Positions 24,034 to 41,112 of a stretch of DNA of 64,000 bases are shown here, piece by piece. The stretch's first letter is position 1; every line of letters starts with the position of its first letter. The stretch lies in the IMG/VR virus record IMGVR_UViG_3300023202_000247, positions 186,001 to 250,000 of that record. One strand, written 5' to 3'. The notes under the pieces are model-generated. The model was not told where the DNA came from. It saw only the letters and a list, made by a program, of their open reading frames with translations, and did not search any database. The position numbers and the translations under genes are program-made.

Positions 24034-24035
24034 AA

Positions 24036-25100: not shown

Positions 25101-25969
25101 TGCCTGATGCAAATACAAATAATGAACAACTCGTAAAATCTTGGCAGAATTATTTACGCCAAGCACCGTTCGGGGTTTCATATTCTGGAGGTACACCTGG
25201 GATATCAGATCAAAATCTGATAAACGCAATAAAAAATCTAGCAAACCGTGCAGGTCAAGTTACAGGTACATTTGTTATTAACAAGTTATTATCTGGTAAT
25301 AATATAGTTGGTGATCCATCAGTAATACAAGCAATTATAAAAGAGCATGGTGTTGGTCAGCCAAAAAAACCGAACGTTGAACAAACTGTTGTTGAGACTA
25401 ATCAACCAGTAACAACAGATGGTAAAGTATCTAATTTCAAACAATGGTTAACCAAATATGGTTTATACAAAGGTGATATTAACAATGAAACTGATAATAA
25501 GTTTGTAGAAGCCTTGCGTAAAATTGAGCGTTCAATCAGTAAATCATTGGAGACATTGGCAGATGTACCAGCAAATAGCGCGCATAATTTGATTTGGACT
25601 GGCAGTCAAATCAACCCGCGTACATCTCCAAATGATATTGAAAAGGCAATAAATCTAATAAAATCTTTCAAGGAATCACAAGCCAAAAAATCTGAAGGGC
25701 AGGTAAACAGTATCTGGCCTTCGGATGCCTGGGATCCGGAAGAGCCAGTGCCGATGTCGATGAAATTTGTTCCGACAAAGGATGATACGGGCATTCAATT
25801 CGAAAGTGCTGACTATGTAAACACACAGCAAATAGGTGAGATGCAACCCAAGATTCCTGCCGATATGAGTGCTCAAGTACCTGAAGAGGTACTCGAGGAA
25901 GAGAAAAAGAGTAAATTAGATGACAGAATTGTTGATTTAGCAAAGTTTTTTCAAAAATTCTTTCAATAG
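25100..25969 (+). CDS. putative protein with degenerate peptidoglycan-binding repeats
   Basis: VKSWQNYL..YSG and FKQWLTKYGLYKGDINN resemble PG-binding helices. Confidence 0.45.
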   Translation: MPDANTNNEQLVKSWQNYLRQAPFGVSYSGGTPGISDQNLINAIKNLANRAGQVTGTFVINKLLSGNNIVGDPSVIQAIIKEHGVGQPKKPNVEQTVVETNQPVTTDGKVSNFKQWLTKYGLYKGDINNETDNKFVEALRKIERSISKSLETLADVPANSAHNLIWTGSQINPRTSPNDIEKAINLIKSFKESQAKKSEGQVNSIWPSDAWDPEEPVPMSMKFVPTKDDTGIQFESADYVNTQQIGEMQPKIPADMSAQVPEEVLEEEKKSKLDDRIVDLAKFFQKFFQ

Positions 25970-26067
25970 AAATGCATAAATTTTGACATCGTGAATTACG
26001 ATGAAAGAAAGATAAGATGTAAGACAATAATTCACGTCAATAATTTAACGTGAGATTGGAATAAAAA

Positions 26068-26757
26068 ATGGCTTTACGTTTACAACAACCAGGCATTCAG
26101 CCTCTCGGACAATTTGATGGTTACGACGCCGATTACTTGAACGTTCTCGGTGGTGAGGTTGGTAGCTTTATTGGAGTCGATGTTAGCGGAACTGATATTG
26201 CTGCTGTTGATGCTGATGGTTCTGACGGTTACGTCGGATTGCCACCAGCTAACACTCGTCCAGCAATCACTGTTCAGTTGGCATCTGGAATGCGTCCGCT
26301 TGGCCTAATCGATGATGGTACTCTCCATTACGGAACCCTATTCGGTCAGGTTGTAGGTGGAGTTGCTGGAAAGGTAGTTACTGGCGGCGCAGTTCTCGGC
26401 CCACACACCGCGGCTGCTTCTGGCAAGCTAACTTTCTGGGACAAGCCAGGAACTTACGCTGTAACTTTGGATGCTGTCGACACCGATTCGGATGGTCTCG
26501 TACCAAGCAACGGTTCGTTGGCAGTTGGCGACGCTCTTTATGCAACCAGTGCGGGTCTATTGACTCCTGCTTCTGCAAAGAGCTTCGAGGCTGGTCCTGC
26601 TATAGTTGTTGCTCGATTCCTCGAGTTCACAACTGATCAGAGCTTGGTCACCACTCCAAATTACCTAGTTTCTGCTTTGAACTCCCCATCTGGTTCAGGT
26701 GCACAGCAGTTGAACTTCACACAAGCAATCATTCACTTCCACCCACCGGGTTCCTGA
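26068..26757 (+). CDS. head decoration (cement) protein
   Basis: Directly upstream of the major capsid; G/A/V-rich; codon bias of a highly expressed gene; VGDALYATSAGLLT motif. Confidence 0.7.
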   Translation: MALRLQQPGIQPLGQFDGYDADYLNVLGGEVGSFIGVDVSGTDIAAVDADGSDGYVGLPPANTRPAITVQLASGMRPLGLIDDGTLHYGTLFGQVVGGVAGKVVTGGAVLGPHTAAASGKLTFWDKPGTYAVTLDAVDTDSDGLVPSNGSLAVGDALYATSAGLLTPASAKSFEAGPAIVVARFLEFTTDQSLVTTPNYLVSALNSPSGSGAQQLNFTQAIIHFHPPGS

Positions 26758-26771
26758 TAGCTGAATGAAAA

Positions 26772-26805
26772 CGGGGCACCCGCCCAGGGTGCCCCATTTA
26801 TTTTT
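26772..26805 (+). terminator. terminator-like hairpin between the decoration and major capsid genes
   Basis: GGGGCACCC-GCCCA-GGGTGCCCC followed by ATTTATTTTT. Confidence 0.65.
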
Positions 26806-26908
26806 ACTTTAGATTTATATATTGCTCGTTTCGGCGAGATAATAATAAAACAAAATGGCTATTGATTTCAATCGGATAGTCTCACCCCAACAACAATACG
26901 GAGAATAA

Positions 26909-27922
26909 ATGAGTTTATTTACCCAATCAGGCGAGTCGAATGGAGTTAGCGTAAAGGACGCTCTCGACACTCTCGTCAAATATGCAGCAATTATTGAAGA
27001 GAATCAGCCGTCCAATGCGGCTCTCGCTGGTCGTCCAAGTTTGAACGACGACAAGCGTGATGAGTTGATTTCTCGCGCAATCCTAACTAACGAGGGTAAG
27101 GTTGCTCTTGCTCAGGCAATGGCCAACCCAATTCGTCGCAACCTTGATTACCAGGGTATTGCACGTCGTGCCCTAGTCGTTGATCCACTACCACAGGGTG
27201 CAACTCCAACATATGACCGTGATATCGACGTTGCGGCAGTTGTGGTTTCCAGCAATGGTGCTGGTCCTGAGAGCCGTGTGTTCGGCGACCGCGTGGTTGT
27301 TCCAACATTCGAGCTTTTGTCGAACCCAACCGTTCGTATCTCTGAGGTACGTCGTCGTAGGTTCAACGTAATTGACCGTGCCGTTCAGAAGGCGCGTCAA
27401 GAGATCATGGCGCAAGAGGACGCGAACATTTTCGCAGCTCTTGATAACGCTGGTACCGTCGAAAACACCGCACAGGATATTTCGGATGGTGGTCTGTTGA
27501 AGCGTGACCTTGTTGAAATCAAGGTCCAGATTGATCGCTGGGACCTTGTAACAACCAAGTTCTTCATGAACATCAATGAGTTTACTGATATCCTCAACTG
27601 GGGATCCGGCGGTGGTCAGGGACCAACCGGTGGTGAGGTAGACCCGGTTACTCAGCGTGAAATTCTACAGACTGGTTTGTACGCTCACATCTGGGGCGCG
27701 GACCTCATGGTCTCGAAGATCGTTCCACCTGGCACTGTTTACGGTTGTGCAGACCCAGAGTTTGTGGGTGTGATGCCGATTCGCCAGGACATTGAGGTTA
27801 TGCCTGCGGACGAGCCGAAACAGCTAAAACTAGGTTGGGTTGTTTCCGAGGAAATCGGAATCGGCATCGTCAACGCTCGCGGTGTTGCTCTTGGTCGCAA
27901 GAGCACCGTAGTTGGCGCGTAA
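26909..27922 (+). CDS. major capsid protein (HK97 fold)
   Basis: GGAG SD; LDYQGIARRALVVDPLPQG..YD, IMAQED, TGLYAHIWGADLMVSKIVPPGTVY; biased codon usage; followed by a terminator. Confidence 0.9.
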   Translation: MSLFTQSGESNGVSVKDALDTLVKYAAIIEENQPSNAALAGRPSLNDDKRDELISRAILTNEGKVALAQAMANPIRRNLDYQGIARRALVVDPLPQGATPTYDRDIDVAAVVVSSNGAGPESRVFGDRVVVPTFELLSNPTVRISEVRRRRFNVIDRAVQKARQEIMAQEDANIFAALDNAGTVENTAQDISDGGLLKRDLVEIKVQIDRWDLVTTKFFMNINEFTDILNWGSGGGQGPTGGEVDPVTQREILQTGLYAHIWGADLMVSKIVPPGTVYGCADPEFVGVMPIRQDIEVMPADEPKQLKLGWVVSEEIGIGIVNARGVALGRKSTVVGA

Positions 27923-27970
27923 TCTGAGTAAAAACGGCTAGTTAGACGGCTAGTTAGCAAAATTAGCTAG

Positions 27971-28010
27971 AAAAAGGGTCGGTGTTGAAACACCGACCCT
28001 TTTTCGTTTT
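27971..28010 (+). terminator. rho-independent terminator after the major capsid gene
   Basis: AAAAAGGGTCGGTGT-TGAA-ACACCGACCCTTTTT. Confidence 0.85.
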
Positions 28011-28074
28011 TCCACACACCCAAATGAACCCAAACAATTTGTCGAGTCATATTATATTATCATGTATATATTGT

Positions 28075-30048
28075 ATGAATTTAGATGAGGTAAAATATCT
28101 AGTTGAAAATGGTATGTCGGTGAGTAAAATTGCCGTACAACATAATTGTAAAACAAATGATATTAAAGATATAATATCGAAATATAATTTATCCTTAGTA
28201 AAAGAGAGCTTTTCTGATGATAAAATTGATGAGATATGTCATTTATATAAACTTGGAGTGAGTGCAAAGCAACTTGGTAAAAAATTTTCAATAGATAAGC
28301 GTAGGATTCAGCGTTGGGTTAAAGAGCGCGGAATTTTGAGAAATAAAAATGATAGTCATCGTATCAAGTTTTTTAATCAAAATTATTTTGATAAAATAGA
28401 CTCAGCAGCAAAAGCTTATTGGCTTGGTTTTTTCTATGCTGACGCTTATAATTCAATCAAAATAAATACATTTTCAATTTCATTGAAACGTGAAGACAAA
28501 GCGCATCTTGAAAAATTATGTAACATATTGAATTTAACTACTGAAAATATATTTGACGGCTATATGTCAGGACATCCATATTCAATATTAAAGCTTTACA
28601 GCAAGCATATTTGTTTAAAAATGACAGAGCTTGGATGTCCGGTTGCGAAAAGCTTTATCATAACATATCCGAACTGGATGCCAAAAAAACTTGAACATCA
28701 TTTTATACGAGGATATTTTGATGGAGATGGTAGCTTAAATTTCACTTTAAATAAATTTAAAAATAAAGAGTGGAAAGTTTCTATTGTGTCAACAGACACA
28801 TTTTGCGAATCGATTTCCAATATATTGCTTCATCAAAATATAAAATTTTCAATAAATAACATATCAAAAACCGGAAAAAATACTAGTAATATAGAAATTA
28901 AAGGAAATGATCAAACTTTTAAATTAATGAATTGGCTATATAATAATTCAAATCAAAATATTAGATTAGATCGAAAATATCAATTATTTTTAGATTTAAA
29001 AAACCAAATGTTTATTAAAAATAACAACATCAGTTTACAACTTGGAAATTTAATTGAAATTGATGGACAAAAATTATCCGCGAAATATATTAAACAATTA
29101 AACAAGAATGAACGTGAATCATTGGTAATGCCAATTTATAACCACTTCAGAAAAACTGGATGGCAATATCCAAAAGTACATAAAGACATTTTAATTAGAG
29201 ATTATCAAAAGCTTATTGATAAAGAGATAGATATTGATAACGTTTATTTAAACAATAATGACAGAGTTTGTACAAATATATGTCATCATTTTTGTGAGTC
29301 ATATTATAGAGCTGGAACTAGAAGTATAATTGATGTGTGGAATGATGATGAAAAATTCTTATCAGTCATAAGAAACAGACTTGTATTAGATTGGCAATCA
29401 AAAACCAATGAAACATTTAATATTACTGGAAGAATGATGATTCAGGGAATTAAAAGTATGATGCTAAGTAACCCTATAAGTATATTTAAGCCGGTCATAG
29501 CAAAATACATTTGTATGAAATATTCTAATCCTGGAGAGTTAGTTGGAGATTATTCGGCCGGATTTGGTGGAAGATTACTTGGTGCTACATCGTGCGGACG
29601 CAGATATATCGGAACAGACCCCTTAACCGTTCCTGATTTAATAGATATGGTTAAATTTTATAATTTAGAAGAAACGGTAAGGCTTCATCAAGTGTGTTCA
29701 GAAAATTTTGCATTGGAAAAAAACTCAGTTGATTTATATTGGAGTAGCCCTCCATACTTTGATAAAGAAAGATATTCTGATGAAGAGTCTCAAGCTTATA
29801 ATCGTGGTGAAAATTATTTTTTTGATGTGTATTGGAAAAATACATTAAAAAATGTATATCATGCACTAAAGCCAAACAAATGGTTCGGATTAAATGTAAA
29901 AGATGTGCCTCTTATGGTTGATATGGCAAAACAATTTTTTGGCGAACCAAAAGAAATTATATATCTCTATACTAGAAGAAATCACTTAAACAAATCTTCA
30001 AATAAATATAAATTAGAACCAATTTACATGTTTTACAAAAATGCGTGA
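28075..30048 (+). CDS. HTH-LAGLIDADG homing endonuclease fused to an amino (N4C/N6A) DNA methyltransferase
   Basis: KAYWLGFFYADA and HFIRGYFDGDG; C-terminal DYSAGFGGRLLG (SAM binding) and SSPPYF (catalytic); very AT-rich; likely start ATG 28075. Confidence 0.85.
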   Translation: MNLDEVKYLVENGMSVSKIAVQHNCKTNDIKDIISKYNLSLVKESFSDDKIDEICHLYKLGVSAKQLGKKFSIDKRRIQRWVKERGILRNKNDSHRIKFFNQNYFDKIDSAAKAYWLGFFYADAYNSIKINTFSISLKREDKAHLEKLCNILNLTTENIFDGYMSGHPYSILKLYSKHICLKMTELGCPVAKSFIITYPNWMPKKLEHHFIRGYFDGDGSLNFTLNKFKNKEWKVSIVSTDTFCESISNILLHQNIKFSINNISKTGKNTSNIEIKGNDQTFKLMNWLYNNSNQNIRLDRKYQLFLDLKNQMFIKNNNISLQLGNLIEIDGQKLSAKYIKQLNKNERESLVMPIYNHFRKTGWQYPKVHKDILIRDYQKLIDKEIDIDNVYLNNNDRVCTNICHHFCESYYRAGTRSIIDVWNDDEKFLSVIRNRLVLDWQSKTNETFNITGRMMIQGIKSMMLSNPISIFKPVIAKYICMKYSNPGELVGDYSAGFGGRLLGATSCGRRYIGTDPLTVPDLIDMVKFYNLEETVRLHQVCSENFALEKNSVDLYWSSPPYFDKERYSDEESQAYNRGENYFFDVYWKNTLKNVYHALKPNKWFGLNVKDVPLMVDMAKQFFGEPKEIIYLYTRRNHLNKSSNKYKLEPIYMFYKNA

Positions 30049-30051
30049 ATA

Positions 30052-30112
30052 GCTAGTTAGCAATAATTAGCAAGAAGAGATGCTGGTGTTTAGACACCAG
30101 CATTTTTCGTTT
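30052..30112 (+). repeat. diverged second copy of the post-capsid element including the terminator (copy 1 at 27949-28010)
   Basis: GCTAGTTAGCAA(T)AATTAGC...GGTGT-loop-ACACC...TTTTCGTTT, with compensatory changes in the stem. Confidence 0.8.
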
Positions 30113-30165
30113 ATATATATAAGATAAAATAGTCGAGTGATACCTGCATTTGAGCCATATAAAAT

Positions 30166-30414
30166 ATGTCAAAAAAGATATCCGATATTAAAGTTCATAA
30201 AATTTTAACTTTATATGCTGATGGCAATTCGACGCATGATGTATCTAAGCTTACTGATGTTTCTCAAACGCAAGTAAGAAGAATATTAAAGAAAAACAAT
30301 ATGAATATACGTCAAGTTAAAACCAGTAAAGATATTGAAAGACAAATTTGTGCATTATATGATTCAGAAGAATCATCTGAAAAATTGCCGCATATATGCA
30401 ATAAAAGTATATAA
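30166..30414 (+). pseudogene. truncated HTH N-terminus of a homing endonuclease-like gene
   Basis: LYADGNSTHDVSKLTDVSQTQVRRILKKNN, then a second HTH start that breaks off. Confidence 0.55.
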
Positions 30415-30420
30415 ATATGT

Positions 30421-31947
30421 ATGACCACTTCTGGATTTAACACCGGTAAAAAAAACTTTACAGTAAACTTTACTGTAAAAAATGTTTCATCCAAAAATAT
30501 TAGAGTTTTTGGATTTCCAATTCCACCAGGAAGACAACGCGATCTTCTAGCTATTCCATACGTTGGCGAAGATGATATACGATCTTCTTTGATAAAAGGA
30601 GAATTGTATAATAAATTACAATCTGGTGAAATAAATGTTGTTACAAGTAGCAATAATCTAGTAACATTTGATGATTCTTTTAAAAATTATCTTGGATCGC
30701 GTGGAGTATCTGGAATTACTATTGCTTTACCCGACACGAGCCAGGCGACGTGGTTCATCGACGCGGTGAACGGCGACGATGTGAACGACGGCGCGACTGC
30801 GGCCACCGCACTGGCCTCGTGGGGCGAGTTGGTCGAGCGGCTGGGCCCGAACCCGGTGTTCGCTAACAACAATGTGGCGATCATCATCCTGTCCGATCTT
30901 GAGGAGGTCATCGGCTTCACGAACATGGCTTGTGAATCGGTGCAAGTGTCTTTAACTGGCAATCCCATCGTAACGGCTAGTGGCACTCTCACCGGCGCTT
31001 CCAACGTCAACCGAACGGGAGGATCCGCCGCTCGGCAAGAAATCGAGCAAGCTGCATTTGATTGGACGCCTTACGTGGGCATGTTGATCCGGTTGAGCAA
31101 TGGCGCAATGGCATGGATCGATGAGGTCGATCCCACTGGTGGAGGCGTTTCGACGGCCAGCACGTCACGTTTCTATGACGTTCCTTCGTTCTCAGCATAC
31201 AGCCCGGTCGGAAACGAAACTTGGGAAGTTTTACGGCTCCCCAAGGTTGAGGGGATGGCTCTAAGCGGTAATGCGTTCGACTTCACTCCATCCTTCGATG
31301 CGCCCTTGTCCATCGAATTGCTGGACTTCGAGCCGACGGGCGGATCGGTGTTCGGCCGAGCCTGCTACCAGCTTGAATTTGGGGGAGGAGCATTCCCCGT
31401 CGTCATGAACAATTGCCGAATCAATACTGACTGGTTACGGTTCGGGCAAACGCCTGTTTCTTGCTCGAACGTGTTTCTGACCGATTCTGGAACATCCGTA
31501 TCCATTATTGGCAACAACGCGGTATCCTTCACAGCTGGGCTCATTAGCACGGGGACCCTGTTAGCCTACACGTCGAACATGTCTCATAGTACAGACATGC
31601 TAACGCGCGCGAAAATCGCTTTGCAGCCGGGAAGCACGATAACTGTGCAGGGCAATGGACTAGGAAGTTTCGTGAGCGGTGGAAACGCATTCACCGTATC
31701 GCCGGGCTGTACGTTGAATTGCGGAGATAGAGGCATATATGGTACCGGGGCTGCGCTGGCGTTCAAAAACCAGCCGGGAGGCACGATAACCTACGCCACC
31801 AATCCGCCCACCGGTATCCAAAGTGTGGCCGACCCGGCCAATACGCAAAATGGCGACGCAGCAAACACGCTCACCTATGCCGGCGGTGCGCCCGACTGGG
31901 CCACGGGCGACGTCAATCGCGGCGCTATCGTGCAGCCGGTATTCTAG
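30421..31947 (+). CDS. virion appendage/fibre-like protein: AT-rich N-terminal anchor plus GC-rich beta-rich cargo
   Basis: The first ~95 aa are paralogous to 34602; abrupt GC rise at ~30730; WFIDAVNGDDVNDG motif typical of beta-helix starts. Confidence 0.7.
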   Translation: MTTSGFNTGKKNFTVNFTVKNVSSKNIRVFGFPIPPGRQRDLLAIPYVGEDDIRSSLIKGELYNKLQSGEINVVTSSNNLVTFDDSFKNYLGSRGVSGITIALPDTSQATWFIDAVNGDDVNDGATAATALASWGELVERLGPNPVFANNNVAIIILSDLEEVIGFTNMACESVQVSLTGNPIVTASGTLTGASNVNRTGGSAARQEIEQAAFDWTPYVGMLIRLSNGAMAWIDEVDPTGGGVSTASTSRFYDVPSFSAYSPVGNETWEVLRLPKVEGMALSGNAFDFTPSFDAPLSIELLDFEPTGGSVFGRACYQLEFGGGAFPVVMNNCRINTDWLRFGQTPVSCSNVFLTDSGTSVSIIGNNAVSFTAGLISTGTLLAYTSNMSHSTDMLTRAKIALQPGSTITVQGNGLGSFVSGGNAFTVSPGCTLNCGDRGIYGTGAALAFKNQPGGTITYATNPPTGIQSVADPANTQNGDAANTLTYAGGAPDWATGDVNRGAIVQPVF

Positions 31948-31964
31948 CCTTCTCTACTCACGCT

Positions 31965-32500
31965 CCGTGCGGAGAACTAGATTCTGGCCAGAAGTTGCAT
32001 CTACTAGCGATAAATTTGTTAGAATTGTAGGAACACAACTTGGCGGTGCGTTTCCATTAGCAGAATTATCACATGAGGGTCATGCTGGTTTTACATCACA
32101 ATAGTTACGAAGTGGTATAAATAATTGGTCAGAAAATTTAGAATATACACCAACTCAAATTTTAATTTATGCTGGTACAAATAATTATCAAAATGGTGAT
32201 AGTGAAGCTGAAGCTGCTAGTGATATTGAAGGTTTATTAAATGATGTTGCTGAATTATTTCCTTCCGCTGATTTATTTTTATCAACGCTTCAGCCAAGTA
32301 CAGATGGTTCTAGAAATACGTGGCATTCTAATTTAAATACATTACTTTCAACGGTTGCATCAAACACTGGAGCAACTTTAATAGATATACAGTCTGGTCC
32401 TAGTGCAATATCATCAGGAGAAATTAGTGGAGATGGTATTCATCCGGATTCTTCTGGTTACCAATTGATTACAGAAACTTTTGGTTCAAATTTACTATAA
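31965..32500 (+). pseudogene. SGNH/GDSL hydrolase remnant
   Basis: HEGHAGFTSQ*LR...LIYAGTNN...DGIHPDSSGY in one frame, with an internal TAG at 32102; the N-terminal GDS motif is missing. Confidence 0.8.
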
Positions 32501-32640
32501 TCATAATGGTCATATATGGTAAGTTAGAATATATGCAGATTGGCATTCTGATGCTATGGTTGAAGATATAGAAAACCGTTTAGCGATATAGTATACTATT
32601 ATTTTCGGTTTATTATGAGTTACCATAGCATGGAGTTTTC

Positions 32641-32946
32641 ATGGTCAATACTATTACATATGGCGTAGATTTTAACTATTACAAAAGTTTTGTAGTAGCC
32701 AGTACAGAGTTTAAAACAAAAGCTGATGTACAATTTAGATTTCGTGGCCAATCGGGTTTTTCTCTTATGAATATGGGAGATAATGTTATTGAATATTCAT
32801 TCAATGGTACGAAAGTGCACGGCACGTTGGTTCCCGACACCGCAAGCGAGGCAATTCAATGGGATTTGAGAAGAGTAGACCACATATGGTTTAGAGTCCC
32901 ATCAGGATCTAGTGAAGTACGTATAGAAGCATGGGCCGGCCTTTGA
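32641..32946 (+). CDS. small beta-sandwich virion protein
   Basis: GGAG SD; the whole protein is paralogous to the N-terminus of the next gene (YSFNGTxVHG, RRVDHIWFR). Confidence 0.7.
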   Translation: MVNTITYGVDFNYYKSFVVASTEFKTKADVQFRFRGQSGFSLMNMGDNVIEYSFNGTKVHGTLVPDTASEAIQWDLRRVDHIWFRVPSGSSEVRIEAWAGL

Positions 32947-32962
32947 TATATAAGGGATAAGA

Positions 32963-34012
32963 ATGGTTGGACCAATAACATATGGAAAAGATGACTCATT
33001 TTTTGATCAATTAACATTTGCAAACACAACTTTTAAACAAAAAGCAGATGTTGTTGTCAACGTAAAATATGTTGATAGCTTTTATATGATTAATACTGGT
33101 GATGAAGTAATTCAGTATTCATTCAACGGTACGGACGTGCATGGTGACATGACACCTGGAAAAGGTAGTGAAGCTTTATCATTTTCAAATCGAAGAGTGG
33201 ATCATATATGGTTTAGGTCTCCAAGCGGAAATAGTGCTAGCGTCTCAGTTGGTGGCTGGGCTGGCGGCGGTAAATTCAAGCTTCGCACATCTAGCAATAG
33301 TGGTCACATCGCCTCTAAGTTTGGAAGCGCCGTCGCTGTTTGGGAGTTGGATGACCCCAATGTTGAACTGAACGGCTCCGATGTATCCAAGGTGCCGAAT
33401 CGGATCAGCCCTGGCACTTATGACTTGGTCCAGACGACGGCCGCGGACCAGCCGCTCTATGAGGCCACCGGGTGGGACGGCTCCGCACCGAGCATGCTCT
33501 TCGACGGCGTTTCGGACTTCATGGAGAGCACTGTTGGGGCCGCCCTCGGAGGCACGGATACTCCGTGGACCATCATCGCAGCTATACAGATCGTTACGGC
33601 TACGGCAGCGTCCAACCAGAGCCTCTGGGCGTTGGGGGACAGCTCTAGCAACACACCTTTTGAGATGACTTTACTTGGTACGACATCTATCTGGACCTTT
33701 AAAAGGGATGATCTCTACACGCAAGATTACTTCAATTATGGTCATAGCTACACGACGTCCCGATCGACTCTCTGTACGGTCACCAGCGGGACGAGCTACG
33801 ATCTCTATGTGGACGGTTCGCTTTCGAGCGGAGGCACGGTAAATGTCGGAGACATGACCGTCGATACGTTGGCCATCGGCATCCTCAAGAGGATCAGCAC
33901 TGGCAATCCGGCCAACATCCGAGTGGGGGCCATCTGGGTCTACGATGAGGAGCTGGATTCCACGGCCATCGCTGACGCTCACGCTGCGATGACCCAGAGG
34001 TGGGCAGTATAA
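32963..34012 (+). CDS. anchor domain plus GC-rich LamG/concanavalin-like cargo domain
   Basis: N-terminus paralogous to 32641; FDGVSDFM, LYVDG, IWVYDEELDS; GC rises after ~33290. Confidence 0.7.
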   Translation: MVGPITYGKDDSFFDQLTFANTTFKQKADVVVNVKYVDSFYMINTGDEVIQYSFNGTDVHGDMTPGKGSEALSFSNRRVDHIWFRSPSGNSASVSVGGWAGGGKFKLRTSSNSGHIASKFGSAVAVWELDDPNVELNGSDVSKVPNRISPGTYDLVQTTAADQPLYEATGWDGSAPSMLFDGVSDFMESTVGAALGGTDTPWTIIAAIQIVTATAASNQSLWALGDSSSNTPFEMTLLGTTSIWTFKRDDLYTQDYFNYGHSYTTSRSTLCTVTSGTSYDLYVDGSLSSGGTVNVGDMTVDTLAIGILKRISTGNPANIRVGAIWVYDEELDSTAIADAHAAMTQRWAV

Positions 34013-34088
34013 CTCGTAAGCAGCAACCTAAGCGTGCAGGTGATGAACCAACAAAACTCTCTAAGTCCAGGGAGAAGTACACGGGCAA

Positions 34089-34210
34089 ATAATGCCAGAA
34101 CATGTTCATTTATTCATTCAAGTCGGTCCTTTGGACCGACCGAATGATATATCAAAAACGTTAAAGAGCATATCAGCAGTACATATATTCGGAAAGTTTC
34201 CTAAATTTTT
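34089..34210 (+). mobile_element. tnpA: IS200/IS605 TnpA (Y1 HUH transposase) fragment
   Basis: IMPEHVHLFIQ..PNDISKTLKSISAVHIFGKFP matches the HUH region; both ends are missing. Confidence 0.7.
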
Positions 34211-34231
34211 AGATGAGTATATTCTGCCTTA

Positions 34232-34561
34232 TATGTCAAATGTATTTGTAACATCAAACAATAGAACATATGAAGAAGATTTTATAAATGCATATGAGAC
34301 TCCTGGATGGGGCATAATAACAATTTATAATAAAAAAGTTTAGATGATGTTGTTTATTACAATCCATCGGAAACATTATCTGTTGGAGATTATTATGAGA
34401 TATCCAGTGTACAAAATCCAACAAAAGTATTGAAGAGAGATTTTTATGATGGAAAAGCTATTCCATTTTAAATGGGAAATGCGCCAATGCCTCCAATTGG
34501 TGGTAGTATTTTAGCAAAGTATTATATTGGTAAAATAATAGATGCATTTTTAGTTAGATAG
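34232..34561 (+). pseudogene. decayed gene (frameshift in an A-run near 34335 and an in-frame TAA near 34469)
   Basis: MSNVFVTSNN... continues in another frame as SLDDVVYYNPSETL...KAIPF*MGNAPMPP... Confidence 0.4.
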
Positions 34562-34601
34562 AAAAGTTTTTGCTAAGAAAAAAGTTGATAATGGTGTTCA
34601 G

Positions 34602-35879
34602 ATGACAAATTTAAGCTCAGGTGTAAAGAAGTTTCCAATAAACTTTACCGTAAAAAATATATCATCTAAAAAACTTAAAATTTTTGGATATCCAATAGAG
34701 CCAGGAAGACAACGCGACTTATTGGCAATTCCATATGTTAGCGAAGAAGACATCAAACTGTCTTGGATAAAAGGTGACCTTTATGTCAAACGTCAAGCTA
34801 AAGAAATATCGATAGTTTCAAGTTCAATTAATCTCATAACATTTGATGCAGATTTTCAGTCTTATCTTCATAACAATGGTGTTGCAGCTGGTACTGAACT
34901 TGACCTATCTCCAATTCAAGAAAATAAATTAGATAGAAGTTATGATAGATACATCAACGTAGAAGATTTTGGAGCAGTTGGTGATGGCGAAACTGATGAT
35001 ACGGTTGCAGTACAAGATGCAATAAATGCTGCAAATGGTCAACCAGTTATTTTTACTGGTGGAAAGATATATTATTGTCCATCAGCACCATTGACTATAA
35101 CAAAATCATCATCACTTATTGGTATGGGTTTTCCACGTGCAAGATTGGATGGATATGTTATATATGATGCACCATCTGATCAAACCGAGTTGCAGTTGGA
35201 AAACTTATGGATACGCGGAACTGATGAAATATGTTTACTTTTGAAATCTCCAATAAGTAGAAGAAGTATATTTAGAGATTTAGAGTTTGATGGAGGTACT
35301 GATGCTGCTATTAGGATAAATAATAGTTGTATAGGTACGAGTTGGCAAAACATTCTTATTCGCAATGCTCCAAATTATGGTGTTAGAGTTGATGAAACTG
35401 TAAATATTAATGCAACACAATGGCGCAGTTGTAGATTCGTTGGTACTAAAATTGCTGGGTTTAGAGCCGGTAGCACTAAAGGATCGTTGTATGAGATTCA
35501 ATTTCACGGGTGCTTGTTTGAGGGTAACTATGGTACTGGTTTAGATATTGAATGTGGAGTTAACTTTAATGTAACAGGGTGTCATTTTGAACAAAATGAT
35601 GGATATGATATTATAATGGGAAGCAATAACGGTATAGTTGCGTGTAGGCTTAGATTGGTAGACACAGTATTTTCTGCTCAGGGAGATGATAACCCGCCCC
35701 CGCGCAGAATATTATTTAGAAATCATCATTCTGTGTTGATATTAGACAATGCTCATAGTGGCGCAAGTGTAGATGGTCAAAATCAAACGGCAGGTTCTAT
35801 AATTCACATATTAAATTATTTTGGCAGTATATTAATTGATAATTTTCCTGCTGAGAAAATAAAACAATGGCCAGAATAA
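34602..35879 (+). CDS. anchor domain plus pectate-lyase-like beta-helix (tailspike-like) protein
   Basis: INVEDFGAVGDGETDDTVAVQDAINAA (pectate_lyase_3 start) and beta-helix repeats; N-terminus paralogous to 30421. Confidence 0.8.
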   Translation: MTNLSSGVKKFPINFTVKNISSKKLKIFGYPIEPGRQRDLLAIPYVSEEDIKLSWIKGDLYVKRQAKEISIVSSSINLITFDADFQSYLHNNGVAAGTELDLSPIQENKLDRSYDRYINVEDFGAVGDGETDDTVAVQDAINAANGQPVIFTGGKIYYCPSAPLTITKSSSLIGMGFPRARLDGYVIYDAPSDQTELQLENLWIRGTDEICLLLKSPISRRSIFRDLEFDGGTDAAIRINNSCIGTSWQNILIRNAPNYGVRVDETVNINATQWRSCRFVGTKIAGFRAGSTKGSLYEIQFHGCLFEGNYGTGLDIECGVNFNVTGCHFEQNDGYDIIMGSNNGIVACRLRLVDTVFSAQGDDNPPPRRILFRNHHSVLILDNAHSGASVDGQNQTAGSIIHILNYFGSILIDNFPAEKIKQWPE

Positions 35880-35902: not shown

Positions 35903-36880
35903 ATGGCTCTTCCTGAAAAAAAATTGCTTAAATTAAAGCAAAAATATCAAAATATTCTTGCTAAATTTAAAGTAAAACATCTTTGGAAATCTGCTGTTGA
36001 ACTCATCCATTCCGATCCCTCAAAGGGTAAATTTAGAAACTGGATGCTAACTCAATTAAAAAATGGATATGATATTGAAGATATTTTACCAACAGTAAAA
36101 TATCTTCATCAACATCAAAAATCTTTCAAAGATATTAACGAATACTCTGATCTGAAAGAATTAGAAGATGAAATAAAAGAAAGAGAGTTAAAAAAACAAA
36201 AAGATGTAAATGTAAAAAAATCTGGAAGAACTAAAATATGGGAAAACGACTCTTGGACCCTACTAAGAATAAATTCTAAAGCTGCGGCTCAGAAATATGG
36301 TAAGGGGTCTAGATGGTGTATTACCATGCATGATGCTTCGTATTATGAACAATACAAAGCATCAAATATCATATTTTATTACTTAGTACCAAAGTTTGAA
36401 ACAAATGAAAAATATGCTTTTGCTGTAAAAAGAAATTTCGATAATGAAATTATCGAAATTGAAATATTTGATGAAAATGATAATGTTGTAGATTCTGCAC
36501 CAGATTATTCTGAATATGAAAATTTGATGAAACAAGATGCTGAATCTCAGCCTGAAGCTGAGATCAGCAAAATAAAGAGAAAGAACTCAAAATATTTAAA
36601 GTTTATTAATGAAAATTTTAATTTTCATCCAATGTTAATATCATCATTATATGAAAAATATGATGATATTGGATCAATTATTGTTAATAACCCAAATACA
36701 CCTCCTGAAATTTTAGATAAACTTAGTAATGATGAAGATGTACATGTTAGAATGCATGTTGCTGGAAATCCAAATAATAAACAGCAACAAGAGCAACAAG
36801 AGCAACAAGAGCAACAAGAGCAACAAGAGCAACAAGAGCAAGTTCCAAAAATTAAACAGTATTATTCTTCTATTTATTGA
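35903..36880 (+). CDS. protein with YGxGxxWC motif (PcfJ-related), one LRV repeat and a QQE tail
   Basis: KYGKGSRWCIT; NPNTPPEILDKLSNDEDVHVRMHVAGNPN. Confidence 0.6.
   Translation: MALPEKKLLKLKQKYQNILAKFKVKHLWKSAVELIHSDPSKGKFRNWMLTQLKNGYDIEDILPTVKYLHQHQKSFKDINEYSDLKELEDEIKERELKKQKDVNVKKSGRTKIWENDSWTLLRINSKAAAQKYGKGSRWCITMHDASYYEQYKASNIIFYYLVPKFETNEKYAFAVKRNFDNEIIEIEIFDENDNVVDSAPDYSEYENLMKQDAESQPEAEISKIKRKNSKYLKFINENFNFHPMLISSLYEKYDDIGSIIVNNPNTPPEILDKLSNDEDVHVRMHVAGNPNNKQQQEQQEQQEQQEQQEQQEQVPKIKQYYSSIY
36783..36842 (+). repeat. 9-bp tandem repeat (AGCAACAAG) x~6.5 encoding QQE
   Basis: Directly visible in the sequence. Confidence 0.95.
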
Positions 36881-37251: not shown

Positions 37252-38247
37252 ATGAAAGCTGTAATTCTGTCCGGTGGCGCGAGTAAAGGTGCATTTCAAG
37301 TAGGAGTTCTTCGAGAACTCTTGAAACAAGATCCGGATTATGATGCTGACATTTGGGCAGGTATCAGCGTTGGTGCACTCAATGCTAGTTTACTTGCAAC
37401 AGATGAGATGAAAAAATCTTTGCCCAAACTCGAATCTATTTGGTTCGACAAAGTAAAGGGTAATCGCTCCATTTGGAATCATCATCTGTTGAAGTATATA
37501 TTGATTGGTATCATTGTAATACTACTATTTACCATAGCAGCATTTGTATCATTTATATTAACATCTCCAAAATGGCTAACATTGATATTTGGTGTATTAG
37601 CAGTAGCTGCATTTTATTTGCCATATTACTCATTGACGCATACTCATTCTATTTATGATACAGCTCCACTCAAAAAGCTCGTTAATGAAGATTTAGATTT
37701 GAGCAAACTTAGAAGTAGTGGTAAAAAGTTAATAGTTGGAGCCGTATCTTTTACATCTGGAAGATATAAATCAGTTAGAGAAACTGAACATGAGATAAAG
37801 AAATGGATCATTGCATCTAGTGCATTTCCAGTATTCTTTCCAATGGTAAAGATAGATGATGAATATTGGACGGATGGTGGTGTCATAGATATCGCACCAT
37901 TTACCGACGCATTGAGATTGGGCGCAACCGACATAGATATCATATTAACTAGTCCAATCAAATCTGGAAACTTTTATGGTAACCCAGGTATCATTCCAAA
38001 ACAATTGATGAGAAACATAGATATAATGTCATCTGAAATATTGAGAAATGATATTGAGGCGAAATGTTTCGATAAAGATATCAAAGTTAGAATATTCATG
38101 CCCGACCACCAACTAACAAGTAACTCTTTGAATTTTGACCCAGTTAGAATAAGAGTCATGTATGATAAAGGTAGAGAAGTTGCCAGGTCTGTATTGGAAG
38201 AAAAAGTCGAGACGCTGGTTGTAGCGAAAAGAAGAATTGATGTTTAA
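37252..38247 (+). CDS. patatin-like phospholipase with a two-helix membrane insertion
   Basis: LSGGASKG, GISVG (GxSxG), ASSAFP and DGG motifs; two hydrophobic helices at ~aa 82-125. Confidence 0.9.
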   Translation: MKAVILSGGASKGAFQVGVLRELLKQDPDYDADIWAGISVGALNASLLATDEMKKSLPKLESIWFDKVKGNRSIWNHHLLKYILIGIIVILLFTIAAFVSFILTSPKWLTLIFGVLAVAAFYLPYYSLTHTHSIYDTAPLKKLVNEDLDLSKLRSSGKKLIVGAVSFTSGRYKSVRETEHEIKKWIIASSAFPVFFPMVKIDDEYWTDGGVIDIAPFTDALRLGATDIDIILTSPIKSGNFYGNPGIIPKQLMRNIDIMSSEILRNDIEAKCFDKDIKVRIFMPDHQLTSNSLNFDPVRIRVMYDKGREVARSVLEEKVETLVVAKRRIDV

Positions 38248-39319
38248 TTTATACTTAGATGCAAACGCTCATTTACCAATGACTCATGCCGCTCTGGCAT
38301 CATTTACGAAGGTCAACAATGGCCAGATGGGTCATGGTCATCCAATGAGTCCCGGTGTAACAGGTAGAGCTGCGGCATGGGCAATCGAGGAGGCTCGTGG
38401 AAATATTGCAAATTATTTGGGATGTAAGTCGAATCAAATCATTTTTACATCGACGTGTAGTCAGGCATGTGAGTGGGGAATCAAAATTGCAAGCAAATTA
38501 GCTCGAAATTTTTTTGTGTCAAAAGCAGAACATCCGGCTGTAAAACAGTCAGTGAGTCGATATATAGACAGGTATGAGAGTATGGAAATAGACTCTCACG
38601 GTCTTTGCAAAATTAATCAAGATTTAGGTGCAGACACTGGAGTCGTTTGTATTCACGTTCAGAATGAAACGGGAGTGATTCAGGATGCACCAACAAAATT
38701 TTCAGAGAATTTGCTATTCTCTGATATGTGTCAAACACCCGGCAAGTTACCCATTAACCTGGGTCAGCTTGACGTTGACATAGCGCCCTTTGCGGCGCAC
38801 AAATTTGGCGGTCCAGCTAGTGTTGGCTTTTTGTATCTCAAAAACATCGAATGGTGGGAAGAGTTCGGAGCCGGCAGCCGGTACTTCACCGACCGAGCAG
38901 GCACGCCAGACGCAGCATCCGTCGTAGCAACAGCTACGGCATTGGGTGAGGCGGTAGCTACGCTCCAAGAACGGTCTGAAAGAGGAAAGAGCTTTCAAAA
39001 GTTTTTGGAAGACGGTCTCGAGGACATGAGTTTAGAAATCGTATCGAAAGATGCTCCGAGGGTATGGAACACGACATTCGTGCACATGCCGGATGGAGCC
39101 GGAATCAAAACCATGTTGAGCTTGGGAGAAAAAGGGATTCATGTGGGATTGGGCAGCGCATGCGGCTCAGCTTACACGGGTACCAGTCCATTAATGCAAA
39201 GTATGAACCGAACGGGTGGTCCTCATGATTACATGAGGATAAGTCAATTTGGTGAATACGGAATAACTGAAGCAAAGCATTTCTTAAAAGTTTTCAAAGA
39301 ATGCTACAAACAACAATAG
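38240..39319 (+). CDS. iscS: cysteine desulfurase (IscS/NifS class V PLP enzyme)
   Basis: YLDANA, EHPAV, QNETGVIQ, AAHKFGGP (PLP Lys), RAGT, GSAC (catalytic Cys), RIS. Confidence 0.88.
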   Translation: MFNLYLDANAHLPMTHAALASFTKVNNGQMGHGHPMSPGVTGRAAAWAIEEARGNIANYLGCKSNQIIFTSTCSQACEWGIKIASKLARNFFVSKAEHPAVKQSVSRYIDRYESMEIDSHGLCKINQDLGADTGVVCIHVQNETGVIQDAPTKFSENLLFSDMCQTPGKLPINLGQLDVDIAPFAAHKFGGPASVGFLYLKNIEWWEEFGAGSRYFTDRAGTPDAASVVATATALGEAVATLQERSERGKSFQKFLEDGLEDMSLEIVSKDAPRVWNTTFVHMPDGAGIKTMLSLGEKGIHVGLGSACGSAYTGTSPLMQSMNRTGGPHDYMRISQFGEYGITEAKHFLKVFKECYKQQ

Positions 39320-40856: not shown

Positions 40857-40887
40857 TTTGCCATGCATATTCTTTCATCAATTTAAT

Positions 40888-41112
40888 ATGGAAGAAAAGT
40901 TTGTTGGAAAAGTAATTTGGTTCAATAACACTCTTAACTTTGGTTTTATAAAACAACAGAACGGTGAACCAGATATGTTCGTTCATTATTCTGATATCGT
41001 TTGTGAAGGATTTAAAACCTTAAAAGAAGGTCAGACTGTTGCATACTCAATTGGAGTAAATCATAAAGGACAACCAAAAGCAACTGAAGTGGTAATAGTT
41101 GAAAATGAATAG
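40888..41112 (+). CDS. cspA: cold-shock domain protein
   Basis: GKVIWFN, FGFI (RNP1), MFVHYSDI (RNP2), GFKTLKEGQTV. Confidence 0.9.
   Translation: MEEKFVGKVIWFNNTLNFGFIKQQNGEPDMFVHYSDIVCEGFKTLKEGQTVAYSIGVNHKGQPKATEVVIVENE

What the first reader, a model, noticed from the sequence alone, without database searches (positions are those of the whole stretch)
30421..35879. Anchor-plus-cargo swapping locus with foreign GC-rich domains
Seen: there are two anchor families. Anchor A (~95 aa, FTVKN..PGRQRDLLAIPYVxExDI) heads 30421 and 34602, with a distant copy in 41284. Anchor B (~100 aa, YSFNGTxVHG..RRVDHIWFR) stands alone at 32641 and heads 32963. Anchors are AT-rich, whereas two cargos switch abruptly to much higher GC in frame (~30730-31965 and ~33290-34030). 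Cargos are beta-helix and LamG-like. Inference: these are virion-surface display platforms that capture carbohydrate-binding or degrading domains from high-GC donors (the host or its other phages), which also hints at a high-GC host.
Basis: partly seen in the sequence, partly recalled or inferred. Interest (0 to 1): 0.6.

Follow-up and report, generated by a model that had tools for sequence, protein, structure and literature searches.

The report
Phage fibre genes with swapped high-GC tips
In an uncultivated giant phage related to Bacillus phage G, two genes join a low-GC, phage-own N-terminal module to a recently imported high-GC C-terminal domain; this is an unusually clear natural record of the known way phages swap the ends of their surface fibre proteins.

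Summary
ORF1 (30421-31947) and ORF3 (32963-34012) change third-codon-position GC from 0.14 to 0.66 at nt 30730 and from 0.22 to 0.68 at nt 33254, in frame. They are the only 2 of 333 ORFs in the 321-kb genome that do so. It is not an assembly artefact: contigs built by another assembler from four samples bridge the junctions.

Anchor A is a real, unannotated N-terminal module. It has 297 clusters, always sits at residues 1-100, heads at least 56 unrelated cargo types, and is predicted to trimerise. Anchor B is normally a stand-alone ~100-aa jellyroll protein, so its fusion to a LamG-like domain is a local event. The "distant copy" at 41284 is not supported.

Both GC-rich cargos have their nearest relatives on 59-67% GC contigs. 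One shares a 105-nt, 100%-identical block exactly at the anchor-cargo joint. A sister phage (90-94% nt identity in the flanks) lacks ORF1. It keeps anchor B at 95% identity, but its LamG tip is only 48% identical. Gene remnants mark the breakpoints: an SGNH esterase, a truncated homing endonuclease and an IS200 fragment.

This is modular receptor-binding-protein shuffling with new anchor families. Virion location and a high-GC host remain untested.

The parts
30166..30414 (+). 82-aa HTH ORF. It is the truncated N-terminus of a homing-endonuclease-like gene that is intact (649 aa, HTH + LAGLIDADG) in sister phage L032. Identity with the sister ends at 30388, which marks the left breakpoint of the ORF1 block.
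   Evidence: PF13384 HTH_23, E 8e-6. L032 4856-7985 aligns to window 27189-30388 at 89.6% nt. N-terminal alignment.
30421..30729 (+). Anchor A, copy 1 (ORF1 residues 1-103). GC 31%, GC3 0.14. An N-terminal module predicted to trimerise.
   Evidence: 58% identity to copy 2. Family of 297 clusters, always at residues 1-100. AF2 pLDDT 73, alpha/beta, no PDB match. Trimer ipSAE 0.82 against best control 0.06.
30730..31947 (+). Cargo 1 (ORF1 residues 104-508). GC 57%, GC3 0.66. A member of a virus-only cargo family that starts with the joint motif QATW[FY]IDAVNGDDxNDG. Fold not determined.
   Evidence: Change point at nt 30730. 33% identity over 82% of the protein to P0002 on a 59% GC contig. 25-31% identity to cargos of other anchor A proteins. 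No Pfam or PDB match.
30753..30857 (+). 105-nt block 100% identical to L007 (396-500). L007 is a 59% GC contig whose gene is unrelated upstream of the block and only ~33% aa identical downstream. Interpreted as the conserved recombination joint.
   Evidence: blastn. In run X3 a contig follows the window to 30857 and then continues as the L007-type sequence (table 7).
31985..32500 (+). SGNH/GDSL esterase pseudogene remnant. AT-rich (GC3 0.09), no start codon, in-frame TAG at 32102-32104, catalytic block I missing.
   Evidence: PF13472, E 1.3e-11, profile positions 55-178 of 178. Frames. Absent from sister phage L032.
32641..32946 (+). Anchor B, stand-alone copy (101 aa). The conserved single-copy small jellyroll protein of this phage clade.
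   Evidence: 257 clusters of 96-122 aa proteins on contigs up to 511 kb. AF2 pLDDT 82, beta-sandwich; best PDB match Ena3A, TM 0.57, E 1.9e-3. 97% identity to P0159 of the sister phage.
32963..33253 (+). Anchor B, duplicated copy, forming the N-terminus of ORF3 (GC3 0.22).
   Evidence: 50% identity to the stand-alone copy. 94.6% identity over residues 1-111 to the L032 819-aa homologue.
33254..34012 (+). Linker plus cargo 2 (ORF3). A ConA/LamG-like lectin-type domain with GC3 0.68. The GC-rich stretch continues to about 34087.
   Evidence: Change point at nt 33254. Relatives P0006-P0009 are stand-alone 255-283 aa proteins; the two whose contigs were fetched (L013, L014) lie on 63-67% GC contigs. 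Atlas Laminin_G_3 feature score 0.97 and TM 0.85. Only 47.7% identity to the sister phage's tip.
34092..34343 (+). IS200-like Y1 transposase fragment at the right breakpoint of the cargo 2 import. Its 119-nt core (34087-34205) is a repeat that branches in other assemblies.
   Evidence: PF01797, E 1.7e-6, profile positions 46-92 of 121. Loose ends at 34087 and 34205 in X2 and X3. No second copy in the assembled genome.
34602..35879 (+). ORF4: anchor A copy 2 plus a pectate-lyase-type right-handed beta-helix (probable polysaccharide depolymerase). Uniform low GC (GC3 0.21 and 0.20).
   Evidence: PF12708 E 5.9e-10 and PF13229 E 3.8e-5. PHROG tail-spike and tail-fibre families. No GC3 change point. 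82% nt identity to L032.
26909..27922 (+). Major capsid protein. Context only: it places the locus in a phage-G-like jumbo myovirus, between the head and tail modules.
   Evidence: phrog_2522, E 1.4e-74. 55% identity to Bacillus phage G gp27.

Best explanation
The locus is a hot spot of fibre or receptor-binding-type genes in an uncultivated jumbo phage related to Bacillus phage G.

The genes. ORF1 and ORF4 are paralogous proteins. Their ~100-aa N-terminal module (anchor A) is predicted to form the trimeric base that docks the protein on a phage structure. Their C-terminal parts are interchangeable binding or degrading domains: a virus-only ~405-aa domain in ORF1 and a pectate-lyase-type beta-helix in ORF4. 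ORF3 is a local duplicate of a conserved small jellyroll protein (anchor B) fused to a ConA/LamG-like lectin domain.

The mechanism. Cargo is replaced by recombination between phages. The 5' crossover falls in a short conserved joint at the start of the cargo. For cargo 1 this is the W[FY]IDAVNGDD region, preserved as a 105-nt identical block. For cargo 2 it is the AVWELDDP...ELNGS region. The 3' crossover is illegitimate and leaves wreckage: an SGNH esterase remnant, a truncated homing endonuclease and an IS200 fragment.

The tracer. In this phage the last imports came from a gene pool of ~60-67% GC, so the swaps show up as GC3 steps of about 0.5 inside open reading frames.

Shown: the architecture, the composition steps, foreign codon usage, relatives on high-GC contigs, the identical joint, the difference from a sister phage, and that the junctions are real.

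Inferred: virion location, carbohydrate ligands, and that the swap changes host or receptor range.
For: Composition:
- GC3 steps and change points. These are the only 2 such ORFs of 333.
- Other anchor A genes in relatives are compositionally uniform, with anchor-to-cargo GC3 differences of -0.14 to +0.16.
- Cargo RSCU correlates at -0.36 to -0.51 with the phage's own anchor A, ORF4 and portal genes, and at +0.63 to +0.71 with the L007 gene.

The junctions are real:
- One Logan contig of 6,308 bp spans 30433-34700 with 0 differences (X1). One of 11,690 bp spans 30300-34041 (X2).
- Bridging pieces occur in X3 and X4.

Modularity of anchor A:
- 297 clusters at E<=1e-3, all matching at the N-terminus, with protein lengths of 84-1323 aa.
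- 56 cargo clusters.
- Among 40 representatives, cargos include collagen repeats, DUF5907, Beta_helix and Laminin_G_3.
- Predicted homotrimer: ipSAE 0.82 (runs 0.85, 0.00, 0.82) against best control 0.06.

Donor pool and joints:
- 105-nt, 100% identity to L007 with unrelated or diverged flanks.
- The same cargo family sits behind a different N-terminus (VAKTDFLAPADLRI...) followed by the same SQATWYIDAVNGDD joint on 61-64% GC contigs.
- Cargo 2 relatives are stand-alone genes; the two fetched contigs are 63-67% GC.

Sister phage L032:
- Flanks are 90-94% nt identical and the ORF1 block is absent.
- Anchor B is 94.6% identical but the LamG tip only 47.7% identical. There are ~470 extra residues between them and a different 3' flank.

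Remnants at the breakpoints.
Against: - No experimental or proteomic evidence that either anchor is in a virion.
- Neither anchor occurs in any deposited phage, nor in phage G.
- The anchor A fold has no significant structural match: best Foldseek E 0.36 and best VIA Z 4.1.
- Anchor B's usual neighbours are non-structural genes: patatin, cold-shock protein and a LigT-like ligase.
- The ORF1 cargo fold and ligand are unknown.
- True donors are not sampled. Apart from the 105-nt block, the nearest cargo relatives are only 33-38% identical.
- All four runs that hold the locus come from one study, and two may be the source sample.
- One of the three trimer runs scored 0.00.
Confidence: 0.75

Rival explanations
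1. Assembly chimera. The GC-rich stretches belong to another organism and were mis-joined to the phage contig at short shared repeats such as the 105-nt block.
For: A 105-nt block is shared exactly with a co-occurring high-GC sequence. The X3 assembly graph branches at its end, at 30857.
Against: - Four junctions would all have to be in frame or orderly.
- Single contigs from a different assembler span all of them in X1 (250x depth, 0 differences) and all but the last in X2. Short contigs bridge them in X3 and X4.
- Relatives (L006) have the same anchor A plus same-family cargo architecture at normal GC.
- Sister phage L032, from other runs, also ends its anchor B gene in a GC-rich LamG tip.
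Confidence: 0.02
2. Host-gene capture. The GC-rich domains were taken from the chromosome of a high-GC bacterial host, so the steps report the host's GC. In this view the jumbo phage is much more AT-rich than its host, as phiKZ is relative to Pseudomonas (this comparison is from my own knowledge).
For: - Cargo GC of 57% and GC3 of 0.66-0.69 are typical of high-GC bacteria.
- The genome's left arm (2.3-16 kb) is also 54-60% GC, with plasmid-like ArdC and AAA genes.
- One cargo 1 relative lies on a 2.7-kb contig binned to an Anaerolineae MAG.
Against: - Scans of 185,579 species genomes found no cargo 2 relative and only that one short contig for cargo 1.
- Atlas look-alike clusters are 100% viral for cargo 1 and mostly viral for cargo 2.
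- Relatives lie in runs of small co-oriented genes without bacterial markers, although PHROGs gave no hits there either.
- Cargo 1 relatives on high-GC contigs carry their own N-terminal anchor-like module, as phage fibre genes do.
- The core genes of this phage have GC3 of about 0.3, and its closest cultured relative, phage G (MCP 55% identical), was isolated on a Bacillus, a low-GC genus (my own knowledge).
Confidence: 0.15
3. The anchor proteins are not virion parts. They are intracellular or secreted accessory proteins (for example defence or counter-defence, or superinfection exclusion) whose variable C-termini evolve under an arms race.
For: - Anchor B and the 41284 family sit among patatin, cold-shock and LigT/Acb1-like genes in relatives.
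- There is no structural match to known tail or capsid adaptors.
- No terminator or promoter signal above chance defines a late operon.
Against: - Cargo types are those of fibres and spikes: collagen triple helix, DUF5907, pectate-lyase beta-helix and LamG. ORF4 matches 23 PHROGs, most of them tail-spike, tail-fibre or tail-protein families.
- Anchor A genes follow the major capsid gene directly in L003 and L005.
- The locus lies between the capsid and sheath genes on the same strand.
- A trimer is predicted.
Confidence: 0.1

Closest known systems
Modular receptor-binding proteins (tailspikes and tail fibres) of Klebsiella, Escherichia and Acinetobacter phages, with an N-terminal anchor and a C-terminal depolymerase exchanged by horizontal transfer (Latka et al. 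2019, PMC6872550; Latka et al. 2021, PMC8262889; PMC10408124)
   Same: - A conserved N-terminal structural module is shared by paralogues in one genome and across phages.
- The C-terminal domains are unrelated and interchangeable, and include a pectate-lyase-type beta-helix.
- Exchange happens at a conserved boundary.
- A trimer is predicted.
   Different: - The anchors here are new sequence families with no Pfam, PHROG or PDB match, and are absent from all deposited phages.
- The phage is a phage-G-like jumbo myovirus known only from metagenomes.
- The attachment site is unknown.
- The exchange crossed a GC gap of roughly 20 points or more, leaving an intragenic GC3 step of about 0.5.
Bacillus phage G (Donellivirus gee), capsid genes gp26 (decoration) and gp27 (major head protein)
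   Same: The major capsid protein is 55% identical. The genome is jumbo-sized.
   Different: Phage G has neither anchor A nor anchor B by profile search. The gene after its MCP (gp28) is unrelated to anchor A.
Laminin_G_3 / ConA-like lectin domains of phage proteins (PF13385)
   Same: Cargo 2 resembles viral Laminin_G_3 clusters of ~220 aa in language-model features (score 0.97) and in predicted structure (TM 0.85). It ends with the usual ...RVGAIWVY...L motif.
   Different: It is below the Pfam gathering score (18.2 against 27.6 bits). Here it is fused behind a duplicated small jellyroll protein.

Membership tests
Modular phage receptor-binding proteins (N-terminal anchor + exchangeable C-terminal domain) | The same N-terminal module heads proteins with unrelated C-terminal domains, both within one genome and across phages | tested here: met
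   Anchor A forms 297 clusters, all matching at the N-terminus, with 56 cargo clusters among 134 proteins. There are two paralogues in the window and two to three in L003, L005 and L006.
Modular phage receptor-binding proteins (N-terminal anchor + exchangeable C-terminal domain) | The C-terminal domain is a glycan-binding or glycan-degrading fold (beta-helix depolymerase, lectin, esterase) | tested here: inconclusive
   ORF4: PF12708 above its cut-off. ORF3: LamG-like by the Atlas, but sub-threshold in Pfam. ORF1 cargo: no family or PDB match.
Modular phage receptor-binding proteins (N-terminal anchor + exchangeable C-terminal domain) | Homotrimeric assembly | tested here: met
   In silico only. 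Three copies of anchor A gave ipSAE 0.82 (runs 0.85, 0.00, 0.82) against best control 0.06, with partner pLDDT 85-86 in the passing runs. Collagen-repeat cargos in the family imply trimers.
Modular phage receptor-binding proteins (N-terminal anchor + exchangeable C-terminal domain) | The protein is part of the virion and attached to the tail, baseplate, neck or capsid | not testable with these tools
   No cultivated phage carries the anchors. Only gene position between the capsid and sheath genes supports it.
Modular phage receptor-binding proteins (N-terminal anchor + exchangeable C-terminal domain) | Evidence of horizontal exchange of the C-terminal part between phages | tested here: met
   GC3 steps, foreign RSCU, the 105-nt identical joint, and the sister phage with a 95%-identical anchor but a 48%-identical tip.
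Anchor A family membership of ORF 41284-41748 | Detectable sequence homology to the anchor A profile | tested here: not met
   No BLASTP alignment. No HMM match in the genome at E<=1. hhalign probability 6.8%. It belongs to its own conserved single-copy family.
SGNH/GDSL hydrolase (PF13472) | Complete domain with catalytic blocks I-V in an intact ORF | tested here: not met
   The score is above the cut-off (45.8 against 32.9 bits), but only profile positions 55-178 are present. There is no start codon and an in-frame TAG at 32102-32104. It is a pseudogene remnant.
IS200/IS605 Y1 transposase (PF01797) | Full-length HUH/Y1 domain | tested here: not met
   Only profile positions 46-92 of 121 are present. 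It is a fragment.

The most novel reading that the evidence does not exclude
Anchor A and anchor B are previously unrecognised docking modules of phage-G-like huge phages. This lineage acquires receptor-binding tips from phages of very different GC content, which would imply either co-infection of one host by phages ~20 GC points or more apart, or a high-GC host for a 40% GC jumbo phage. The conserved 105-nt joint would then act as a cross-lineage recombination 'adaptor' that lets distantly related phages exchange host-range determinants.
Probability: 0.25. Interest if true: 0.65.

Novelty: new member of a known kind. Interest (0 to 1): 0.5.

Why it matters
Swapping of receptor-binding domains is how phages change host range, and it is the basis for engineering them. 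This locus offers four things.
- Two new anchor families, well populated in metagenomes and absent from cultivated phages. They could help annotate fibre genes in huge phages, where most structural genes are unnamed.
- A natural experiment in which composition marks exactly where the crossover occurred. The 5' joint falls within a few codons of the domain boundary, and the 3' end is untidy and leaves remnants.
- A sister genome showing that the same slot holds different alleles.
- Evidence that huge phages draw on a gene pool with a very different GC content, which bears on who exchanges genes with whom in the environment.

Tried and rejected
- Single-sequence scans of IMG/VR with anchor A, anchor B and the SGNH remnant found nothing. 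Alignments were needed.
- blastn of the locus against deposited phages gave only ~50-80-nt beta-helix motif matches.
- Fold searches for anchor A in the PDB were not significant with either Foldseek or VIA wide. BFVD gave one borderline uncharacterised hit, plus phage G gp163 at TM 0.36.
- Anchor B matched only generic jellyrolls and cupins and unnamed viral Atlas clusters.
- PDB profile searches gave nothing for cargo 1 and nothing meaningful for cargo 2.
- PHROG scans of genes neighbouring the high-GC relatives gave no hits, so their phage nature is not shown by that route.
- Scans of genome and viral contigs for cargo 2 found nothing. The 14-sequence cargo 1 alignment was too diverse to scan with.
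- Host inference from the ArdC-like gene of the GC-rich left arm was uninformative: 33-46% identity to Desulfovibrio and Bacteroidota plasmids.
- Promoter and terminator scans were at chance level.
- I considered and rejected amino-acid composition or expression-driven codon bias as the cause of the GC rise. The step is at third positions, it is abrupt, and it runs past the stop codons.
- I considered intragenomic duplication from the GC-rich left arm. There are no paralogues of the cargos in the genome.

Full report
**Context**

The window is bases 186001-250000 of a 321,461-bp IMG/VR virus record, estimated 75% complete. Overall GC is 40.6%.

It carries a structural gene series on the + strand:
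- large terminase at 1113-2963, portal at 2980-6195, and a prohead-protease-containing ORF at 12315-15860;
- major capsid protein at 26909-27922 (phrog_2522, E 1.4e-74);
- tail sheath at 59946-62405.

The capsid protein is 55% identical to gp27 of Bacillus phage G. The virus is therefore an uncultivated relative of that 498-kb myovirus. The finding lies just after the capsid gene and a LAGLIDADG endonuclease/methylase ORF (27982-30048).

**Checking the observation**

The ORFs are as described: ORF1 30421-31947 (508 aa), a 101-aa ORF at 32641-32946, ORF3 32963-34012 (349 aa) and ORF4 34602-35879 (425 aa).
- The N-termini of ORF1 and ORF4 are 58% identical over 100 residues.
- The 101-aa ORF and the N-terminus of ORF3 are 50% identical.

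The composition change is large.
- GC goes from 29% to 55-59% in 300-nt windows.
- Third-position GC goes from 0.14 to 0.66 in ORF1 and from 0.24 to 0.69 in ORF3, against about 0.29-0.32 for terminase, portal and sheath.
- Likelihood change points fall at codon 103 (nt 30730) and codon 97 (nt 33254). ORF4 has none.
- The sequence shows the ORF1 switch within a few bases...attactattgcttta|cccgacacgagccaggcg....
- Among 333 non-overlapping ORFs of the whole genome, only these two have such an internal GC3 range.
- Seven other anchor-A-headed genes from relatives are compositionally uniform.

One sub-claim fails. The ORF at 41284 gives no BLASTP alignment to anchor A. A 45-sequence anchor A profile does not find it at E<=1. 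It reaches only 6.8% probability in hhalign. It belongs to its own conserved single-copy family.

**Is it an artefact?**

No. The exact ORF3 protein is encoded on contigs assembled independently (Logan) from three runs.
- When contigs from four runs of one study are laid on 30300-34700, one 6,308-bp contig covers 30433-34700 with no difference (X1).
- One 11,690-bp contig covers 30300-34041 (X2).
- Shorter contigs in X3 and X4 bridge the individual junctions.
- Two of the samples may be the source of the record, so this is independence of assembler and partly of sample, not of study.

**What the anchors are**

*Anchor A.* A profile search of 1.84 billion representative proteins gave 297 clusters at E<=1e-3, of which 267 are at E<=1e-10.
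- In 149 of the 150 listed hits the match starts within the first ~20 residues. Total protein lengths range from 84 to 1323 aa.
- The parts behind the anchor fall into 56 BLAST clusters among 134 proteins.
- Among 40 representatives Pfam recognises collagen triple-helix repeats, DUF5907 repeats, a right-handed beta-helix and Laminin_G_3.
- In relatives L003 and L005 an anchor A gene follows the capsid gene directly, and a second copy lies a few genes on. L006 has two in tandem followed by a stand-alone anchor B.
- The module has no Pfam or PHROG family. Its AlphaFold model (pLDDT 73, mixed alpha/beta) has no significant PDB match.
- Three copies are predicted to associate. The ipSAE was 0.82 against a best control of 0.06, with one of three runs at 0.00. 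The mark was reached by 20 of 30 solved homo-oligomers and 1 of 23 monomers in the tool's calibration, which used two copies, so the counts hold only roughly.

*Anchor B* is different.
- It is found as a stand-alone protein of 96-122 aa in 257 clusters, on contigs up to 511 kb.
- It sits beside patatin, cold-shock and LigT-like genes.
- Its model (pLDDT 82) is a small jellyroll. The best match is the Ena3A spore-appendage subunit, at TM 0.57 and E 1.9e-3.
- A search of proteins of 192-610 aa with ORF3 found no other anchor B fusion.
- The fused copy is therefore a local duplication, shared only with the sister phage described below.

Neither anchor occurs in phage G or in any of 50,697 deposited phage records by tblastn.

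**What the cargos are**

*ORF4* carries a pectate-lyase-type beta-helix (PF12708, 39.7 bits against a cut-off of 27) and matches many PHROG tail-spike families.

*Cargo 2* is ConA/LamG-like.
- Pfam is sub-threshold (E 0.003).
- In the ESM Atlas, however, 26 of 30 feature neighbours are viral Laminin_G_3 clusters (score 0.97), and the Atlas model aligns to such clusters at TM 0.85.

*Cargo 1* belongs to a family seen only in viruses.
- It is 25-31% identical to the commonest long cargo of anchor A proteins.
- It aligns with L006's homologue from the anchor through residue 240.
- Its fold is not established: there is no Pfam or PDB sequence match, and one family member weakly hits K1-lyase_C.

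**Where the GC-rich parts came from**

The nearest relatives of both cargos lie on high-GC contigs.
- For cargo 1: P0002 (33% identity, 59% GC), P0004 (64% GC), and L029-L031 (61-64% GC).
- For cargo 2: P0006-P0009 are stand-alone 255-283 aa proteins. The two whose contigs were fetched (L013 for P0006, L014 for P0007) are 63-67% GC.

Codon usage of the cargos is anticorrelated with the phage's own genes (r -0.36 to -0.51 against anchor A, ORF4 and portal). It correlates with the L007 gene at 0.63-0.71.

The most telling detail is a 105-nt block, 30753-30857, encoding FIDAVNGDDVNDGATAATALASWGELVERLGPNPV.
- It is 100% identical to L007. Upstream of the block the L007 gene has a different N-terminus, and downstream it is only ~33% identical at the protein level.
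- In run X3 a contig follows the window up to 30857 and then continues as the L007-type sequence, so both genes coexist in that habitat.
- On the 61-64% GC contigs the same cargo family follows yet another N-terminal module (VAKTDFLAPADLRI...), joined through the same SQATWYIDAVNGDD motif.
- The start of the cargo is thus a conserved joint shared by different anchors. That is what homologous recombination between modular fibre genes needs.

Donors look viral rather than chromosomal. Atlas neighbours are 100% viral for cargo 1 and mostly viral for cargo 2, and scans of one genome from each of 185,579 species found no cargo 2 relative and one 2.7-kb MAG contig for cargo 1. PHROGs could not confirm phage identity of the donor contigs.

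**Direct comparison with a sister phage**

Anchor B's closest homologue (97% identity) led to L032, a 20.8-kb contig from unrelated runs. L032 is 94% nt identical to the window over 23393-27186 and 90% over 27189-30388. The two differ exactly at the cargo positions.

1. The block 30389-32613 (ORF1 plus a downstream remnant) is absent. L032 instead has the rest of a 649-aa HTH+LAGLIDADG ORF. The window's 82-aa ORF at 30166-30414 is the truncated N-terminus of that ORF.
2. The ORF3 homologue is 819 aa. Residues 1-111 are 94.6% identical. About 470 AT-rich residues then follow that the window lacks. The protein ends in a GC-rich LamG tip only 47.7% identical to cargo 2. Nucleotide similarity resumes at about 70% only over the first 225 nt of the tip, the AVWELDDP...ELNGS region that is also conserved in P0007 and P0008.
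3. After the tip, L032 has a GC-rich 127-aa ORF, where the window has an IS200-like fragment.

ORF4 is conserved at 82% nt, although its anchor is split over three frames in L032.

The anchor is conserved while the tip has been replaced.

**Debris at the breakpoints**

- Downstream of ORF1, frame 31985-32500 encodes the C-terminal two thirds of an SGNH/GDSL esterase (PF13472, E 1.3e-11, profile positions 55-178 of 178). It has no start codon, an in-frame TAG at 32102-32104 and GC3 of 0.09. It is a displaced earlier gene or domain.
- Downstream of ORF3, 34092-34343 is a fragment of an IS200 Y1 transposase (profile positions 46-92 of 121). Its 119-nt core branches in other assemblies.

**Interpretation**

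These are modular fibre or receptor-binding-type genes. Their C-terminal domains are replaced by recombination at a conserved 5' joint and an illegitimate 3' end. The latest imports came from a gene pool of about 60-67% GC.

This is the mechanism documented for Klebsiella and E. coli phage tailspikes (PMC6872550, PMC8262889, PMC10408124). Here it involves new anchor families, in a group of huge phages, with an unusually clean compositional tracer.

Not shown:
- that the proteins are on the virion, and where they would dock;
- what they bind;
- what the host is.

A high-GC host remains possible. From my own knowledge, jumbo phages such as phiKZ can be ~30 GC points below their host. Nothing here tests it.

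**Limits**

- All read evidence comes from contigs of one study.
- The true donors are unsampled apart from the 105-nt block.

Noticed in passing
window 27187-27188 (inside the MCP gene 26909-27922); L032 3799-4855: The sister phage L032 has a 1,057-bp insertion carrying a LAGLIDADG_2 ORF inside the major capsid gene, at this point. The window's MCP is uninterrupted. This looks like an intron or homing-endonuclease presence/absence polymorphism.
   Followed up: partly
window 27982-30048: A 688-aa ORF combining HTH, LAGLIDADG endonuclease (phrog_4645, E 3e-51) and a C-terminal DNA-methylase-like part. It lies directly after the capsid gene and has very low GC (28.6%).
   Followed up: no
window 49520-53080: A 1186-aa ORF with no PHROG match. 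Its first 72 codons have GC3 0.64 and the rest 0.29, which is the reverse polarity of the ORF1/ORF3 steps.
   Followed up: partly
window 2980-6195: The portal ORF is 1071 aa. The PHROG portal match covers only residues 127-375. Residues 371-783 weakly match PhoH, RNR and thymidylate-synthase PHROGs, a pattern typical of an inserted intein or endonuclease.
   Followed up: no
genome G000:C1:2300-16800 (outside the window; loci L024, L025): The left arm of the phage record is 51-60% GC, with GC3 up to 0.79. It encodes an ArdC-like antirestriction/zincin protein and a Mg-chelatase-type AAA protein. It is either another large high-GC acquisition or a different replicon joined to the contig.
   Followed up: partly
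window 34087-34205: The 119-nt core of the IS200-like fragment is shared with another sequence in runs X2 and X3, which continues as an intact transposase (...LKGRRFWGSG). An active copy therefore exists in the community or in the unassembled 25% of the genome.
   Followed up: partly
window 41284-41748; L006 7711-8139 (-); L026, L027, L028: A conserved single-copy ~145-175-aa protein family with an acidic tail, always near the cold-shock and 299-aa genes in this phage clade. It is not demonstrably related to anchor A.
   Followed up: yes
L032 13292-14554: In the sister phage, the anchor A part of the ORF4 homologue is split over three overlapping frames, while the pectate-lyase part is intact. 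This is either a decaying gene or contig errors.
   Followed up: partly
window 35903-36880: A 325-aa ORF with a (QQE)n repeat near its C-terminus and a weak LRV repeat hit. Very AT-rich (28% GC).
   Followed up: no
window 37252-39319 and 40858-41112: Patatin-like phospholipase, class V aminotransferase and cold-shock protein genes sit between the capsid and tail modules. The same genes neighbour anchor B in 370-511 kb relatives.
   Followed up: no
L005 8769-10607: A collagen-like (GxY repeat) ORF of more than 613 aa directly follows the second anchor A gene in relative L005.
   Followed up: no
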